DNA of 64,000 nucleotides from Macrostomum lignano (taxonomy: Eukaryota). The notes beneath the pieces were generated by a model. It saw nothing but the letters and a program-made list of their open reading frames with translations. It had not been told where the DNA came from and made no database searches. Location: positions 23,539-87,538 of the forward strand of contig NIVC01003063.1 of the NCBI GenBank assembly GCA_002269645.1, given 5' to 3'. Numbering within the stretch: the stretch's first letter is position 1; each line of letters starts with the position of its first letter. This document shows positions 1 through 64,000 of this stretch, piece by piece. The position numbers and the translations under genes were made by a program.

Positions 1-1445
1 TCTGCTTGTGAAACCTGAGCAAAAGGGTGTTTTTGTGATGATTGTGTTATTTTCGGAAAGGAAATATTAATTTCTTTAATAAACCACTTACCCGACTCTG
101 TGACATCATCCAGATTCTCGTAATTGATATCAGTGAGTTTTCTCATTTCCCAAACGAAAGACAGACCTGAAAACTTTGTGCCACAGTTTTCTGTGCAATC
201 CGCTAGGTAAACCAAAGGAATTGAGCCTCGAACCCTCTCGGCACAGTTGCTAACACATCTGAAAATCAGATGAGCACGTTGAACCTCCTCATAGAACAAA
301 AATCATGATTATTCGGACAGATACCAATCAATAGATGAAAAATTCTTACAAAATTCTCACAGACGCCCGTCTCTGAGGCGAAATAAATATTTTCCAATCA
401 GCAATGGCGCCGCGCATATCCTTTGACAAAATAACACGGATCAAGTACGTCTTATTGGGAAGCATGTGAAAGGTACTAAGCATTAACGTAGCCATCTCGT
501 TCTGCTCCATGAAGATTCCAATGCCGTTTCCAAAGCAGCCGGAGTATCCTTCCAGATCTTGGCTCACAGGAATGCTAATCCGAGTTGCGACATTGTCAGG
601 AAGTGACGGCAGCTCCGCCTCCTGCAGACAAATCCAGCGAAACGCCATGCCCGTCAGATTCCCATCCTCCACGTCCCAGTCCCGAGGCGACAGCTCCAGC
701 CTGACAGTTTCGTTGTAGGCAGCGGAGGCCTGTGTTGACTCATTGTTGAAGCTCAGCGTCAGAGGTGTCTCCGTGATTTTGAGGAAAAACGCGAACTCTG
801 CAGACACCGGAGGCGTCACGGCAAACATGGATAGGTTGAGTACAATCTTGTACAGACCATACCAGAGTGTGCGGTTGGGAACCTGCAGCAGAAATGAGTT
901 ACCGAGACCCAGGCTGACTTCAGCTCCGGCTGCATTCAGAACTCGCCAGCGCCAATACGTGTTGCTTGTCTTCGTGCAGTTTAGCTCCGGAAGACCCTCA
1001 ACGACGATCTCCTGGGACCTCATCAGCTGCAGAGGCCTCTCGGGATCCCACTGGGTCAGAATCCGACCAGCATGAGAAAAGTTCAGCTTTGGTTTGTCGC
1101 ACATCCAGTCGAGTATAATTGCCAGAGTTTCGGCTGTGTCGTTGCTGACATGGTTGAATGCTAGCAGAGAAGCCGAGAAGCCACCAAGACTTGGATAAAC
1201 GTGAGAAAACGAAAACGACGTGTTATTGTAACCAATCTCAGTAAAATTGATGCCGTGACTATCAGAGTAGGGCTGACACAAAAATGGAATGCCAAAGCTG
1301 ATCGATGTAGAGTCTCCAAAATCTACGACAAAACAGCTGTTTGTGCCGAATCTGGTGATGTTTAAGAAGAAGAAAGTCGCGTTCGATAAGAAGGCCGAAC
1401 CGTTCGTTTTGAAGCTTCCGACTATGACAGCATCGAGCACAATGT
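1..1445 (-). CDS. Copy A REJ-module exons (~353-1445, 92-258 and 1-14)
   Basis: The 364-aa ORF is highly similar to copy B 43791-44890 (LVVDFGD, WRWRVL...LLQVPNRTLWYGLYKIVL, DWDVEDG...FRWIC). Exon 92-258 is 167 nt, the same length as copy B 43124-43290. Confidence 0.9.
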
Positions 1446-4400
1446 CTACAGAGATCGGAAGCGTTTGGAAGGAGGTGTCACGTGACTCTTGTTTTCAAAA
1501 AGCTTTATCTAAATATTTAAATCAGCAACTAGACTCACCGACGGGAAACCCGAGGACTCCAACTCTGACCCGAGCGTCTCCATGGAAGCTGAGTGGTGAC
1601 AGCACCAGGAACTTTGCGATAACAGGGTTCGGAAGATCCTCCATAAACATTGTTTCGTAGATGATGGAGTTCAGCAATGTCTTATTCAGAATACTTGTCC
1701 TGGGCACCTCCTGCAGCTGGGAGTCGTCATGAGTTCCATAGTGCAGTCTGTACTGATTCAAACAAGATCCATTGAACCCAGCAGTGACAATGGAAAACAC
1801 TCGATGAGGAACCGGGAATGTGATGCGGACGGAGGCATTCACTGGGAGCTCAAAGGCTGAGTCGCTACTCAGCAGCAGGGCGGCAGGCCCGCGTTCCCAG
1901 CTCGCACTGGAGGGCTGGCTCACCGTGACCTGGTGCGGCGCCACCGGCACGAGGGGCGCCTCAGCCAGCGACTCAGGAGTGCAGCCGAACAGCTCAAATT
2001 TTCCGGCGAACCGACCAACCACTCGCAGAGGGTGGATGCGGAAATGGCGGCCGATGACAGGGTTGGGTAGTTGCTCGATCGAGGTAATGCAGCTGTTTGG
2101 GTAGTCCGCAGGTCCGTGCAGAACCTGTGTAATGTTTGTGGAAAGTGGTCTACGAAACTACATATAGTAGCAACAACAACAAAGTGCTTTTGGTTGCCTA
2201 AGCGCAAAACCTACAGATGAAGCCGAGCCCCAGAAACGCTCGTTGCGGGAGTACATCAGTACGTAGGCCACAGTCGCCTCTCTGGCAAGTCCTTGCAGAC
2301 AATAAATGCCCGACATTGCCACAGCTCGCACTGTTGCCTCCTCCTGGAAATTCACTTGAAGCCACTCGTCGATGCCTGTGCTTTCCGCCCTGAAGAACCC
2401 GAAGGTCCCGACCGAAGCAGCTGGAGTAAAAAAACAAAATAATAGAAATCTTATTTTTGACTTTGCAGGAAACTAAATCCGAAGGAACATCGCTGAGACG
2501 ATGGTAAATTGAAAAGGACTTTTACAAAGAATATAGTTTTTGTTTAAAACTGTTAAAACACTTAAATTTTCTGGCACTCATCATAGTGTGACGTTGTCAA
2601 TTTTAGTAGCCCCGCCAAGGGCCGTTTCGACATACGGTACCAATCCATAATATTGTTAATTTAATGGTCCCGTTCTCTCACGTCTGCTTAAAGTAGCGAC
2701 CAAAGAATTTTAAATAACTCGCGTACGTTTGTAAGCCTAAGTACAGTAGGCGATCGATAATTTCTGTTTTTCTCGCCGGCCAATAGCAAAGCCGCGCATA
2801 AATTATGTTAGCTTGAAATTAAGTTCTCCGCGCGCACCCACCCCCCAGCCCACTCTTTATCAGTCCTGTCTGGCTGGGGCGCTCGGGGTTAGGCTCCCTT
2901 TCTCTCTCATTTTTACTCTCCTCTCTGGCTCCTTGCTTTTGTTTACTCGTTAGCCAGCCTTAGGCCCTTGCCACCCCGGCACTCTGTGTTTGCTTGCCTT
3001 TCTCTCTCCGCCTTATTCCGCCACCACACGTTCATTGCCATTACACCGTTACCATTGCCTCAGGCTCACCGACCCACTCTATTGCCTACCAGAATTTATT
3101 TATCTTATTGTTGTGTAGCCGCCAGTGCATTCCTTCGGATTCAGCAATTCCTCTGCCCTATCTCTGTTGACCGCTCAGACGGAACTGATAATAGCAAGCC
3201 AACTATTCTCTTATATTGTTACAATAAACCAGTCTGCGGCCATTGCCCGCATCAGTTGCATTATCATCAAGTGCTACCGCTACAAACTTTGCCTCCGCCG
3301 TGTTGTCTTCGAAATCATTTTCGAGTCTTTATAGCTATTTTTATAGCTATAAACCGACGTTTAAAATTGGCCTTGTTATAGATTTTAGGTTACAAATGCA
3401 GTATTCCCACAACTATTCCCATATCCTATTGTCAAAGAACGAAAAAGCGAATTGACACGACTCAGAGTCAAACGCGCTTCAGAAGACTTTCAACAATTTT
3501 TTGCTTTTCATATCGCATCTTGACCCGCTTCTGCTGCTGACGTGAGGCTGGGTCAGGTTAACAGAAATCTTTGCATCAGCTTTAGATATGCAAGCTTAAT
3601 ATTTACCCTGTAAATTTAATCCGAAAGCAACGTTCTGAGGTGGATATCCAGGCAGGCTGGACTTTGCCGTGATGCTGGACACTGGCACCGTGACGTTGTC
3701 GTCTGGGTCAGGGCTCAGCAGCGGGCTTTCGCAGTTTGCGACTGAAATGGGGTGGCTTTTCGCTCAGAATATGTAAAGCGAATTCATGAAGCTGAATCAG
3801 TCACGACTTGCTAAGTCTGTTACCGTAGCAACGCCATCGGAAAGAGCTCATTAGTTTAGCTGACACGGTCTGAGCTGCAGCCTCAGCTGCCGCGGTGACC
3901 GTGTCGCTGACGATGGCAACATGGTTTCCCAGCACTACGGCAGTGCAGTTTCCAGTTTCGTTTCGTTGGCAGTCAGCCATTGGCTTAAGCATCGGATCAG
4001 ATATAGAGTACACGCCGATGGGATTTGCCACCACTGGACTTAGAGCGGTCGTAAATAGCTTCGAGTCGCAGGAGTTTCCTGTGATGGTTATTTTTACAGT
4101 ATTTTGAGTTTCAGTCATTGGCACTTGCTATAATACGAACTACGAGCTATATTTCACTGAGTTTTGATCGATAACCGTGATCTGAACACTCACCAGGTGC
4201 GGCTGGCACCTCACAGATGAACGGAAAGACGGCAGTTTCGCTGTCGCAAGGCACGGTGGACCACTGCATTCTCTCACCTACCTCCGATACCACGCAGCCG
4301 CTGGTTGCACTGCTAGGCTGCCTCCAGTTGTTCAGATGGGCTGACAGGGGCCTGCCGTCGGAGGTTTCAAAGCTGCCGCTGGCGTTGCTGAACTCGCCAT

Positions 4401-63700: not shown

Positions 63701-64000
63701 AGACTCACCAAACACTCAGGAAGCTCATCACGGCCGCGTCCTTCGGCATCAGTAAGCTGCCTCGGCCACCAGCCCAGAAGTAGGAGCTGCACAATCTGTG
63801 TGCACTGCTCTGCAGAGCCTTCACGGCGCCGAAGTGCAGGCAGATGTCTCCGTGTGGGGTGAAGCCTGGCGGACAGGGGCTGGCCTGGACGCCCCAGAGG
63901 GACACTTCCTCCGGCTGCAGAGACCCGTTGGTGACGTGGATTGTGAGATGGATCGGCGTCAGCAGCACCGGGAACTCGAATATCCATCGGGCTGAGCTTT
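51754..64000 (-). CDS. Copy B lectin-module exons paralogous to copy A 1539-13260
   Basis: Exon-by-exon collinearity with copy A. Includes a kringle-like pair of exons at ~62200-62490 (NVTARGQVC...RNYC...PYC...EDC). Confidence 0.85.
55333..55917 (+). CDS. C-terminal half of a Polinton/adintovirus-type major capsid protein (PY)
   Basis: KLTGIELYLEVIEP, NPRYIII, YMHGDVRSI...YP...DFSQNKISKFYSE and LYPMFGADVS resemble the Polinton double-jelly-roll MCP C-terminal pattern. 5'-truncated, with no ATG at the start. Confidence 0.7.
   Translation: MKLTGIELYLEVIEPKTALKADYLKAIEKEIDVAYTAYMCRDERNETRTNICIKEGSCCNPRYIIINMRNPNSIIRYMHGDVRSIQHEISDNLYPALPQNGDFSQNKISKFYSELVDLAVKGNNGIAITALQYGTLYPMFGADVSARQMPTDNSPVNIVTNIERAVATPVDLYIIYAFERKVKLNMINNSSSKV
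55953..56828 (+). pseudogene. Polinton-type minor capsid/penton (PX) gene, frameshifted
   Basis: IRLDPGAKYHVYL...WSNVPNVTAANNKFYY, RELGFEKKVY, GQMLVEKP and IHEIVLQFETEDGVGVDFNGEEFVLTLIIE. Joining them needs about four frame changes (~56272, ~56365, ~56597, ~56660). Confidence 0.8.

What the first reader, a model, noticed from the sequence alone, without database searches (positions are those of the whole stretch)
1..64000. Tandem family of giant polycystin-1-like receptors with shuffled multi-lectin ectodomains
Seen: two head-to-tail paralogs (A at least 34 kb, B at least 26 kb), with many F5/8, C-type lectin, fucolectin-like, kringle-like, FAMeT-like, fibrinogen-like, EGF-like and PKD modules upstream of REJ-GPS-PLAT-channel. 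Exons frequently use phase-1 boundaries. Established: vertebrate PKD1 has one C-type lectin and one WSC domain, and sea-urchin REJ proteins have a few CLECT/CUB domains. Inference: this may be a diversified glycan-sensing receptor-channel family for gamete recognition, chemosensing or innate immunity, coupling many pattern-recognition folds to a TRPP channel.
Basis: partly seen in the sequence, partly recalled or inferred. Interest (0 to 1): 0.75.

Follow-up and report, generated by a model that had tools for sequence, protein, structure and literature searches.

The report
Tandem giant lectin-rich polycystin-1-like genes
The window holds two neighbouring copies of a very large flatworm (Macrostomum lignano) polycystin-1-like receptor-channel gene with an outer part built from many lectin-type and adhesion-type modules; this is a rare, undescribed variant of a well-known family, and one copy carries a premature stop and the other a large internal deletion.

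Summary
Both genes lie on the minus strand, head to tail. Gene B runs from 64000 (5' end cut off) to about 37281. Gene A runs from a signal-peptide exon at 34529 to position 1 (3' end cut off).

- **Confirmed by Pfam:** PKD repeats, REJ, polycystin domain, PKD channel, C-type lectin, F5/8C discoidin and fibrinogen-C.
- **Weakly supported:** the fucolectin-like modules (profile against PDB, E=0.0012).
- **Not verified:** the kringle-like, EGF-like and FAMeT-like labels.
- **Same gene:** lectin exons join the PKD/REJ exons through introns of 36-150 nt. About 64% of ectodomain introns are phase 1.

A and B are colinear rather than shuffled. Mosaic dS (0.10 versus 1.03) indicates gene conversion, and dN/dS is about 0.2. 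A has lost a 6.7-kb block. B has an in-frame TGA on a conserved glycine, three frame-shifted exons and a transposon insertion.

Among the 150 best relatives, only two predicted Dimorphilus (annelid) proteins share this architecture. They also share a degenerate GPS motif that lacks the HL-T/S cleavage site. The sugar-binding motifs are not conserved, so glycan sensing remains untested.

Verdict: a new variant of a known kind, of moderate interest.

The parts
37281..64000 (-). Gene B: PKD1-like gene, 5' end cut by the window. About 50 predicted exons, stop near 37281, AATAAA at 37271-37276.
   Evidence: Viterbi exon model; Pfam; stop and poly(A) signal.
37496..39034 (-). B channel exon: polycystin (TOP) domain plus the PKD cation channel (last six TM segments).
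   Evidence: Pfam Polycystin_dom 84.9 bits and PKD_channel 54.7 bits. PDB hits: PKD2L1/PKD2 E about 1e-37 to 1e-32, PKD1L3 5e-18, PKD1 1.5e-4. 95% identical to M. lignano UniRef protein P0001.
39149..41837 (-). B GAIN/GPS-like region, TM1, PLAT loop and TM2-5.
   Evidence: Aligned with relatives. PLAT 16.9 bits, below cut-off. Hydropathy peaks. 98% identical to UniProt A0A1I8HJJ4, named 'GPS domain-containing protein'.
42308..44940 (-). B REJ domain, with a proximal PKD repeat.
   Evidence: Pfam REJ 99.4 bits over 43830-44940 plus 42617-42981.
44955..44957 (-). In-frame TGA in B, inside conserved coding sequence, on a glycine conserved in five relatives.
   Evidence: Sequence. The read-through translation aligns without gaps to P0003, P0004, P0009, P0010 and P0016.
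44958..47953 (-). B PKD-repeat array, preceded by a Cys-rich region with no family match. Absent from A.
   Evidence: Pfam PKD 52.6 bits, at least 2-3 repeats. No Pfam hit for the first 532 residues or so.
48041..50489 (-). B-only block: CTLD-like (49976-50489), unknown module (49401-49895), fibrinogen-C (48324-49348), EGF-like exon (48041-48184).
   Evidence: Fibrinogen_C 24.7 bits; EB module 18 bits; no Pfam hit for the CTLD-like part, though the local CTLD profile includes it.
51754..52638 (-). B F5/8C discoidin domain plus a following beta-rich domain.
   Evidence: Pfam F5_F8_type_C 28.7 bits.
54408..57413 (.). 3-kb insertion in a B intron, with an 87-nt inverted repeat (55226-55312 / 57279-57365). 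Probably a DNA transposon.
   Evidence: A/B colinearity; inverted repeat; the plus-strand ORFs have no Pfam hits.
57414..64000 (-). B distal ectodomain, colinear with A 4913-13354. Frame switches lie near 63315, 61148 and 58382; at 63315 the cause is two 1-nt deletions in C runs.
   Evidence: tblastn frame switches; DNA alignments.
1..34529 (-). Gene A: PKD1-like gene, 3' end cut by the window inside REJ.
   Evidence: Exon model; Pfam.
34451..34529 (-). A first exon: ATG and a signal-peptide-like sequence MLKLFLRIFACCSVVGVWPAGDAQSIG, then a GTGAGT donor in phase 1.
   Evidence: Sequence, plus phase match with the acceptor at 34008. No signal-peptide predictor was run.
349..1494 (-). A PKD remnant plus the N-terminal part of REJ. 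It joins the F5/8C exon (1539-2124) through an intron of 51 or 93 nt, at the breakpoint of the 6.7-kb deletion.
   Evidence: Pfam REJ 52.2 bits; sequence at the junction; 95% protein identity to B.
1539..2420 (-). A F5/8C discoidin domain plus a beta-rich domain.
   Evidence: Pfam F5_F8_type_C 44.4 bits.
4194..4712 (-). A C-type lectin domain (third supermodule).
   Evidence: Pfam Lectin_C 27.8 bits.
5525..13260 (-). A second supermodule, in 5'-to-3' order: beta module - CTLD (11814-13150) - unknown - kringle-like (10522-10985) - fucolectin-like (9882-10426) - FAMeT-like (8834-9584) - F5/8C (8397-8771) - fucolectin-like (7625-8280) - F5/8C (5525-7545).
   Evidence: Lectin_C 16.8 bits, F5/8C 16.9 and 23 bits. 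PDB: lactadherin C2 E=0.005 and F-type lectin 3le0 E=0.0012.
16286..30203 (-). A first supermodule, an older internal duplicate of the second at about 25-30% identity. It includes CTLD 28086-29110, kringle-like 26113-27015, fucolectin-like 25091-25641 and 18091-18913, FAMeT-like 23586-24786 and F5/8C 16575-17644. F5/8C remnants lie at 20437-20580 and 18991-19095.
   Evidence: ORF clustering; Lectin_C 33.7 bits; local profiles; remnants.

Best explanation
The window, from Macrostomum lignano, carries a tandem duplicate of a giant gene of the polycystin-1 / REJ family.

**Domain order encoded.** Each copy encodes, or once encoded:
- a signal peptide;
- an ectodomain of several thousand residues, built from a repeated 'supermodule' of beta-sandwich module, C-type lectin, Cys-rich modules, F-type-lectin-like, unknown beta module and discoidin;
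- in the ancestral form, a CTLD, fibrinogen-C, EGF-like module and a PKD-repeat array;
- REJ, a GAIN/GPS-like region with no cleavage motif, TM1, PLAT, and ten more TM segments ending in a TRPP-type channel domain.

**How the locus evolved.**
- The ectodomain grew by duplication of phase-1 exons.
- The two copies arose by segmental tandem duplication.
- They have since exchanged sequence by gene conversion.
- Copy A lost the proximal 6.7-kb block. Copy B acquired a nonsense codon, frame shifts and a transposon insertion.

**Inferred function (not shown).** By analogy with PKD1-like proteins, an intact protein would sit in the membrane of a ciliated sensory cell or sperm cell. It would pair with a PKD2-like subunit and turn binding or pulling on its huge adhesive ectodomain into cation influx.
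For: **Family core**
- Pfam finds REJ, PKD, Polycystin_dom and PKD_channel.
- PDB sequence matches to PKD2L1, PKD2, PKD1L3 and PKD1.
- At least 10 hydropathy peaks after the GPS region.

**Ectodomain**
- Pfam finds Lectin_C, F5_F8_type_C and Fibrinogen_C.
- The fucolectin-like profile matches an F-type lectin structure at E=0.0012.

**Lectin and REJ exons belong to one gene**
- All exons are on one strand. From the CTLD at 50489 down to REJ, introns are 36-150 nt. In A, the F5/8C exon and the PKD-REJ exon are separated by only 51-93 nt, which leaves no room for a gene boundary.
- An in-frame chain can be threaded from the signal-peptide exon to REJ.
- The closest non-Macrostomum relatives are Dimorphilus DgyrCDS14438 (6071 aa) and DgyrCDS14777 (5543 aa). 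They carry F5/8C x3 or more, F5_F8_type_C_2, Lectin_C x2, Fibrinogen_C and PAN upstream of PKD and REJ. Their proximal order, F5/8C-FBG-EGF-PKD-REJ, is the same.
- The same clade shares the derived GPS motif 'F..NLFGS'.

**Duplication and conversion**
- Colinearity of A and B.
- dS is 0.10 in high-identity exons and 1.03 in divergent exons, with dN/dS about 0.2 in both.

**Lesions**
-.

**Organism**
- 98-100% identity to M. lignano UniProt fragments A0A1I8HJJ4 and A0A1I8GDD4.
Against: - There is no transcript evidence. The exon model is my own ab initio Viterbi model. It is demonstrably wrong in places: it spliced out the TGA as a 36-nt 'intron', and it used transposon-derived exons at 22643-23182.
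- Public M. lignano gene models split this locus into short fragments (137-662 aa), so none shows lectin modules joined to REJ.
- B's stop and frame shifts, and A's deletion, may mean that neither copy makes a full-length protein. Alternatively, some lesions may be assembly errors, since two of them are 1-nt deletions in C runs.
- PLAT and GPS do not reach Pfam thresholds.
- The sugar-binding residues of the CTLD and F-type lectin modules are not conserved.
Confidence: 0.8

Rival explanations
1. Both copies are decaying pseudogenes. They are relics of a giant PKD1-like gene made redundant by the recent genome duplication of M. lignano, and the locus makes no functional receptor.
For: - B has a TGA on a conserved glycine, three frame-switched exons and a 3-kb transposon-like insertion.
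- A has lost 6.7 kb, covering the CTLD, FBG, EGF and PKD array, with the breakpoint inside a PKD repeat.
- F5/8C remnants at 20437-20580 and 18991-19095 could not be threaded in frame.
Against: - dN/dS is about 0.2 over 1,800 codons, so both copies were constrained for most of their divergence.
- Very long exons remain open: 2324, 1539, 1111 and 1094 nt.
- A's deletion junction can still be spliced in frame.
- Two of B's lesions are 1-nt deletions in C runs, which may be assembly errors.
Confidence: 0.35
2. The distal lectin and discoidin exons belong to separate secreted-lectin genes lying upstream of smaller PKD1-like genes.
For: - Some introns are long: 3.4 kb in B, and 2.8, 3.0 and 1.4 kb in A.
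- Public M. lignano models are fragments.
- Planarian PKD1-like proteins have simple ectodomains (PMC11448475).
Against: - The long introns hold tandem repeats or transposon remnants rather than gene boundaries.
- No in-frame stop followed by a start is needed anywhere.
- The one clear signal-peptide exon lies at the far 5' end of A.
- CTLD, FBG and F5/8C exons are within 36-150 nt of PKD and REJ exons.
- The Dimorphilus relatives have the same modules in one protein.
Confidence: 0.07
3. The tandem pair is an assembly artefact, with two haplotypes or homeologs placed head to tail.
For: M. lignano assemblies are known to be difficult (my own knowledge). Some tracts are 97-100% identical.
Against: - Identity is mosaic at 70-99%, with dS up to 1-2 in many exons. 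That is far above allelic divergence.
- The junction looks like normal intergenic DNA: B's stop plus AATAAA, then 2.7 kb, then A's ATG and signal-peptide exon.
Confidence: 0.05

Closest known systems
Predicted proteins DgyrCDS14438 (6071 aa) and DgyrCDS14777 (5543 aa) of the annelid Dimorphilus gyrociliatus
   Same: - Best non-Macrostomum matches to the REJ-to-TM core (E 1e-80 to 3e-88, 31-32% identity).
- Ectodomain of about 4,300-4,700 residues with multiple F5/8C and C-type lectin domains, an F-lectin-type domain, fibrinogen-C and an EGF-like module, followed by the PKD array and REJ.
- Same degenerate GPS motif, 'F..NLFGS'.
   Different: - They have a Pfam-detectable PAN domain and a canonical F5_F8_type_C_2 domain.
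- The window's kringle-like, FAMeT-like and other unknown modules have no detectable counterpart in them.
- They are uncharacterised gene predictions.
Sea-urchin receptor for egg jelly proteins (suREJ1-3 / SpREJ1-10)
   Same: PKD1 family with REJ, GPS, PLAT and 1-11 TM segments. C-type lectin domains occur in SpREJ1-3. They act in sperm as receptors for egg-jelly glycans (PMC1934368).
   Different: - They carry one or two CTLDs, one EGF or one SUEL domain. No discoidin, fibrinogen or F-type-lectin arrays are reported.
- They are much smaller.
- The relatives checked here that NCBI names REJ-like or polycystin-1-like keep the canonical C.C.HLT/S GPS motif.
Human polycystin-1 (PKD1) and PKD1L2 / PKD1L3
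   Same: Large ectodomain with PKD repeats and REJ, then GAIN/GPS, PLAT, 11 TM segments and a TRPP-like last six TM segments. One CTLD occurs in each of PKD1, PKD1L2 and PKD1L3.
   Different: - PKD1 has LRR, WSC, LDL-A and 16 PKD repeats.
- The window genes have repeated discoidin, CTLD and F-lectin-like supermodules, and no HL-T cleavage site.
- The channel part here is closer in sequence to PKD2 and PKD2L1 than to PKD1.
Planarian pkd1L-1, pkd1L-2 and pkd1L-3 (Schmidtea mediterranea)
   Same: Flatworm PKD1-like genes. RNAi of pkd1L-1 reduces chemosensory behaviour and RNAi of pkd1L-2 reduces mechanosensory behaviour. They are co-expressed with pkd2 genes in ciliated sensory neurons (PMC11448475).
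   Different: They are described as lacking the complex N-terminal ectodomain, which that paper regards as specific to chordate PC1. The window genes have an even larger one.

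Membership tests
Polycystin-1 / REJ (PKD1-like) family | REJ domain in the ectodomain | tested here: met
   Pfam REJ at 99.4 bits in B (43830-44940 plus 42617-42981) and 52.2 bits in A (349-1494).
Polycystin-1 / REJ (PKD1-like) family | PKD (Ig-like) repeats upstream of REJ | tested here: met
   Pfam PKD at 52.6 bits with several stretches in 44958-47978. Partial repeats lie next to REJ in both genes.
Polycystin-1 / REJ (PKD1-like) family | GAIN/GPS region directly before TM1 | tested here: inconclusive
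   No Pfam GPS hit. The region aligns column for column with the GPS region of relatives. The 98%-identical UniProt entry is named 'GPS domain-containing'.
Polycystin-1 / REJ (PKD1-like) family | GPS autoproteolysis motif C-x-C-x-H-L-T/S | tested here: not met
   The window reads R-F-V-S-N-L-F-G-S-F-G where Haliotis, Argopecten, Ptychodera and Branchiostoma relatives read C-x-C-x-H-L-T-S/A-F. The M. lignano paralogs and Dimorphilus show the same loss.
Polycystin-1 / REJ (PKD1-like) family | PLAT domain in the first cytoplasmic loop | tested here: inconclusive
   Pfam PLAT at 16.9-17.2 bits, below the 23-bit cut-off. The region aligns with M. lignano paralogs whose PLAT passes at 24-37 bits.
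Polycystin-1 / REJ (PKD1-like) family | 11 TM segments, with a polycystin (TOP) domain and a TRPP-type channel in the last six | tested here: met
   Polycystin_dom 84.9 bits and PKD_channel 54.7 bits. PDB matches. Ten to twelve hydropathy peaks. The exact TM count was not determined.
Polycystin-1 / REJ (PKD1-like) family | All domains present in one transcript or protein | not testable with these tools
   No RNA data. Supported indirectly by short introns, phase continuity and the Dimorphilus architecture.
C-type lectin (carbohydrate-binding CTLD) | CTLD fold | tested here: met
   Lectin_C at 33.7 bits (28086-29110) and 27.8 bits (4194-4712), with a weak 16.8 bits at 11814-13150. The B-only copy at 49976-50489 is found only by the local profile.
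C-type lectin (carbohydrate-binding CTLD) | Ca2+/sugar-binding EPN or QPD motif plus WND | tested here: not met
   Read from the translations: RPAPN...MVD, QPS...WST, QPS with no WND, and EPS...WTA. Which motifs count is established knowledge of CTLDs.
F-type lectin (fucolectin) | F-type lectin fold | tested here: inconclusive
   A profile of four modules hits the S. mitis Sm-hPAF F-type lectin domain 3le0 at E=0.0012. A single sequence hits the eel fucolectin 1k12 at E=0.32. No Pfam hit. The AF2 model had pLDDT 40 and was unusable.
F-type lectin (fucolectin) | Fucose-binding motif H-x24-R-x-D-x4-R/K | tested here: not met
   In the most canonical copy (7625-8280) the His is present, but the two basic residues are I and L (sequence).
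Discoidin (F5/8 type C) | F5/8C domain | tested here: met
   44.4 bits (1539-2420) and 28.7 bits (51754-52638). Sub-threshold copies score 23 and 16.9 bits. PDB lactadherin and neuropilin b-domains at E 0.005-0.01.
Fibrinogen-related domain | Fibrinogen_C domain | tested here: met
   24.0-24.7 bits against a 22-bit cut-off, covering profile positions 43-158 of 221. B only.
Kringle | Kringle domain | tested here: inconclusive
   No Pfam hit at E<=5. The best PDB profile hit is plasminogen kringle 2l0s with a matching Cys pattern, but at E=0.22.
Farnesoic acid O-methyltransferase-like (Methyltransf_FA) | Methyltransf_FA domain | tested here: not met
   No Pfam hit at E<=5. No meaningful PDB hit. 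The only homolog found is an M. lignano fragment. The AF2 model is all-beta at pLDDT 45, and its best fold matches are galectin CRDs, not significant.
EGF-like | EGF-type six-cysteine module | tested here: inconclusive
   Exon 48041-48184 gives EB module 18 bits (below the 24.3 cut-off) and EGF_3 at E=0.82. It matches the M. lignano paralog A0A1I8JK18, which UniProt names 'EGF-like domain-containing'.

The most novel reading that the evidence does not exclude
Macrostomum and Dimorphilus may share an old spiralian subfamily of giant PKD1-like receptor-channels. Two features would define it: a GAIN/GPS domain that cannot cleave itself, and a 4,000-5,000-residue ectodomain of repeated discoidin, C-type-lectin and F-lectin-like supermodules. 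Such a protein could couple multivalent binding of glycans or matrix directly to a TRPP channel, for example for gamete or substrate recognition in small interstitial worms. That would contradict the current statement that complex PKD1 ectodomains are restricted to chordates.
Probability: 0.2. Interest if true: 0.6.

Novelty: new variant of a known kind. Interest (0 to 1): 0.4.

Why it matters
- Polycystin-1-type proteins are central to kidney disease, fertilisation and sensory cilia, yet what their ectodomains bind is still poorly known.
- A recent flatworm study states that a complex N-terminal ectodomain is found only in chordate polycystin-1 (PMC11448475). This locus and its annelid relatives show that some spiralians have even larger, lectin-fold-rich ectodomains on the same 11-TM core, with a GPS site that cannot cleave.
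- If the gene is expressed and intact, it is a natural test of how ectodomain composition and GPS cleavage relate to channel gating. Macrostomum lignano allows RNAi and transgenesis, so the test is practical.
- The locus also illustrates exon-shuffling architecture, gene conversion and early pseudogenisation in a recently duplicated genome.
- It is not a new kind of system.

Tried and rejected
- **36-nt 'intron' rejected.** My gene model removed the TGA at 44955 as a 36-nt intron. The 12 codons are conserved, without gaps, in five relatives.
- **Transposon-derived exons rejected.** Model exons 23067-23182 and 22643-22946 lie in a Tc1/mariner-like remnant. Together they are 420 nt, so dropping them keeps the frame.
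- **Plus-strand genes.** Ten plus-strand ORFs of 125-221 aa had no credible Pfam hit. Many ORFs found on both strands lie in tandem repeats.
- **RNA genes.** No tRNA and no Rfam family was found.
- **Word-indexed homology searches.** These returned only 1-2 hits each, so they could not link lectin modules to REJ in public M. lignano models. The contig look-up for P0001 found nothing.
- **Structure prediction.** Both jobs had only 3-4 window paralogs as their alignment. The FAMeT-like module gave pLDDT 45. The fucolectin-like module gave pLDDT 40. The fold search on the FAMeT-like model returned nothing significant, and the fucolectin-like model was not searched.
- **Diversifying selection.** Not seen: dN/dS is 0.08-0.48 in every exon tested.
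- **Selenocysteine or recoded TGA.** Considered and judged unlikely, because the aligned residue is glycine in all relatives.

Full report
**What the window is.** It is eukaryotic DNA at 42-50% GC with coding sequence mostly on the minus strand. The longest minus-strand ORFs match Pfam PKD, REJ, Polycystin_dom and PKD_channel. The channel ORF is 95% identical to a UniRef protein of the flatworm Macrostomum lignano. Other parts are 98% and 100% identical to M. lignano UniProt fragments A0A1I8HJJ4 and A0A1I8GDD4. The window therefore comes from M. lignano.

**Two genes, head to tail.** DNA and ORF-level self-comparison shows that 1-13354 is colinear with 43118-64000 on the same strand, at 70-97% identity. 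I wrote a small Viterbi exon finder with a 3-periodic Markov coding model, GT-AG introns and phase tracking, self-trained on the Pfam-positive ORFs.
- It predicts about 100 exons, with median introns of 80-120 nt.
- Gene B ends with a short C-terminal exon that looks like a coiled coil. Its stop lies near 37281 and an AATAAA follows immediately at 37271-37276.
- Gene A begins 2.7 kb further on. An ATG at 34529 encodes MLKLFLRIFACCSVVGVWPAGDAQSIG, followed by a GTGAGT donor in phase 1. That phase matches the acceptor at 34008.

**Modules confirmed by Pfam, above its own cut-offs.**
- PKD repeats, REJ, Polycystin_dom and PKD_channel.
- Lectin_C at 28086-29110 and 4194-4712.
- F5_F8_type_C at 1539-2420 and 51754-52638.
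- Fibrinogen_C at 48324-49348.
- Further discoidin and CTLD copies are sub-threshold, but local profiles and PDB matches to lactadherin and neuropilin tie them in.

**Modules only weakly supported or unsupported.**
- PLAT reaches only 17 bits. The region aligns with M. lignano paralogs in which PLAT passes.
- A profile of the four fucolectin-like modules matches an F-type lectin structure (3le0) at E=0.0012. The eel fucolectin 1k12 appears at E=0.32.
- The best PDB hit of the kringle-like profile is a plasminogen kringle with the same cysteine spacing, but at E=0.22.
- The EGF-like exon gives a sub-threshold EB module.
- The FAMeT-like label has no support. There is no Pfam hit and no meaningful PDB hit. 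A low-confidence all-beta model has non-significant best fold matches to galectin-type sandwiches.

**Repeat structure of the ectodomain.** Reading the modules in order shows a repeated supermodule: beta module - CTLD - Cys-rich module - kringle-like - fucolectin-like - 'FAMeT-like' - discoidin - fucolectin-like - discoidin. It occurs twice in A, at 30203-16575 and 16482-5525, followed by a shortened third copy at 5434-1539.

**Are the lectin exons part of the PKD1-like genes?** There is no RNA evidence here, so this remains an inference, but a strong one.
- In A, the exon holding half a discoidin domain (1539-2124) is separated from the PKD-REJ exon by only 51-93 nt.
- In B, every intron from the CTLD-like exons at 50489 through fibrinogen, EGF-like and the PKD array to REJ is 36-150 nt.
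- The few long introns contain tandem repeats or transposon remnants.
- The ectodomain introns are mostly phase 1: 23/35 in B and 33/53 in A, against 4/12 in the conserved core. Many exons are symmetric 1-1, the classic signature of exon-shuffled extracellular modules.
- The closest relatives outside Macrostomum are two predicted annelid proteins of 5,543 and 6,071 residues from Dimorphilus gyrociliatus. They carry the same kinds of module in front of the same core, and in the same proximal order. Pfam finds F5/8C x3 or more, F5_F8_type_C_2, Lectin_C x2, Fibrinogen_C and PAN.

- *A and B are not shuffled relative to each other.* They are colinear.
- *B has a 6.7-kb block that A lacks.* The block (44958-51700) holds the CTLD-like module, fibrinogen, EGF-like module and PKD array. 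The annelid relatives have the block, and A's homology to B resumes in the middle of a PKD repeat, so A lost it by deletion.
- *B carries an in-frame TGA at 44955-44957.* My model first hid it in a 36-nt 'intron'. The twelve codons around it align without gaps to five relatives, and the stop sits on a conserved glycine.
- *B changes reading frame relative to A in three exons.* The switches lie near 63315, 61148 and 58382. The first is caused by two 1-nt deletions in short C runs within a 97.6%-identical exon, so assembly error cannot be excluded there.
- *B has a 3-kb insertion flanked by an 87-nt inverted repeat*.
- *Both copies were nevertheless under purifying selection.* dN/dS is about 0.2 over roughly 1,800 codons.
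- *Gene conversion is ongoing.* Synonymous divergence is bimodal, at 0.10 in some exons and 1.03 in others.

**How unusual is the architecture?** HMMER against 1.84 billion representatives found 1,464 relatives of the REJ-to-TM core. I scanned the best 150 with profiles grown from the window's own Pfam-verified modules.
- 15 had any CTLD, 11 any discoidin and 6 a fibrinogen domain.
- Only the two Dimorphilus proteins combine many of each, with 7 discoidin, 3-4 CTLD and a fibrinogen domain.
- The Macrostomum paralogs and the Dimorphilus proteins share a derived GPS region, 'F..NLFGS.G'. Mollusc, hemichordate and amphioxus relatives keep 'C.C.HLT/S.F'. This clade has therefore lost the autoproteolysis motif.
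- The literature I could search describes one or two lectin domains in sea-urchin REJ and human PKD1-like proteins (PMC1934368).
- It also states that a complex N-terminal ectodomain is restricted to chordate polycystin-1, with planarian PKD1-like proteins being simple (PMC11448475).
- I found no paper describing discoidin, CTLD and fibrinogen arrays on a PKD1-like core.

**Function.** Nothing here shows ligand binding or expression.
- The CTLDs lack the EPN/QPD and WND residues, and the fucolectin-like modules lack the His-Arg-Arg triad (sequences). 'Multi-lectin' therefore describes folds, not demonstrated sugar binding.
- Discoidin and fibrinogen domains are as often adhesive as lectin-like.
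- The most likely working model is inferred from the family. An 11-TM PKD1-like subunit pairs with a PKD2-like subunit in a ciliated sensory cell or sperm. A very long adhesive ectodomain acts as the ligand- or force-sensing part.
- The planarian RNAi phenotypes (chemosensory for pkd1L-1, mechanosensory for pkd1L-2) and the sea-urchin sperm REJ proteins are the two precedents. I cannot rank them.

**Verdict.** The 'shuffled, glycan-sensing family' reading goes beyond the evidence, and at least one of the two copies looks damaged. It is a new variant of a known kind, of moderate interest.

Noticed in passing
window 50768-51723; also 14460-15321, 31006-31360, 17763-18049, 6242-6748: Large intronic tandem arrays: a 36-mer x26.6 at 96% match, a 24-mer x24, a 20-mer x18, (CTAA)x72, and two facing 65-mer arrays. 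They create spurious ORFs on both strands.
   Followed up: partly
window ~21300-23300, e.g. 22679-22807 (-): A degenerate transposon lies in an intron of gene A. It encodes a peptide resembling a Tc1/mariner transposase helix-turn-helix (SIRAVARRIGRSHTAIRKL...). Several broken ORFs lie on both strands with no Pfam hit.
   Followed up: partly
window 55226-55312 and 57279-57365: An 87-nt inverted repeat (94% complementary, 1966 nt apart) lies inside a 3-kb insertion present in B but not in A. It is probably a DNA transposon with terminal inverted repeats. Its ORFs (55252-56297, plus strand) match no Pfam family.
   Followed up: partly
protein P0003/P0163 (NCBI MEE4247216.1, contig of 4909 bp): A protein filed as 'PKD domain-containing protein [Kangiellaceae bacterium]' from a metagenome-assembled genome is 48% identical to the window's PKD-REJ region. 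That includes the animal-type REJ N-terminus. It is probably a flatworm-like animal contig mis-binned into a bacterial MAG.
   Followed up: no
window 60621-60638: At the start of the large FAMeT-like exon, B has a stop codon where A has Tyr (KRY versus KR*). The model avoids it by using an acceptor 18 nt downstream. This may be one more lesion in B.
   Followed up: no
window 37473-37640: The UniRef paralog P0001 ends in a different reading frame (…SRMWILT) from the window's channel ORF (…THESYVDSD…). So the public model, or its gene, has an indel near the C-terminus. A possible coiled coil (SIDLLEMRLNSVESLLNRHNAALRTW) is encoded by the next small exon, 37311-37426.
   Followed up: no
window 44977-47953 (first ~530 codons): A long Cys-rich, N-glycosylation-site-rich region lies between the EGF-like exon and the PKD repeats. 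It has no Pfam match but is shared with M. lignano paralogs (P0008, P0157, P0158). By eye, Dimorphilus has a comparable repeated region in the same position. It may be an undescribed repeat.
   Followed up: partly
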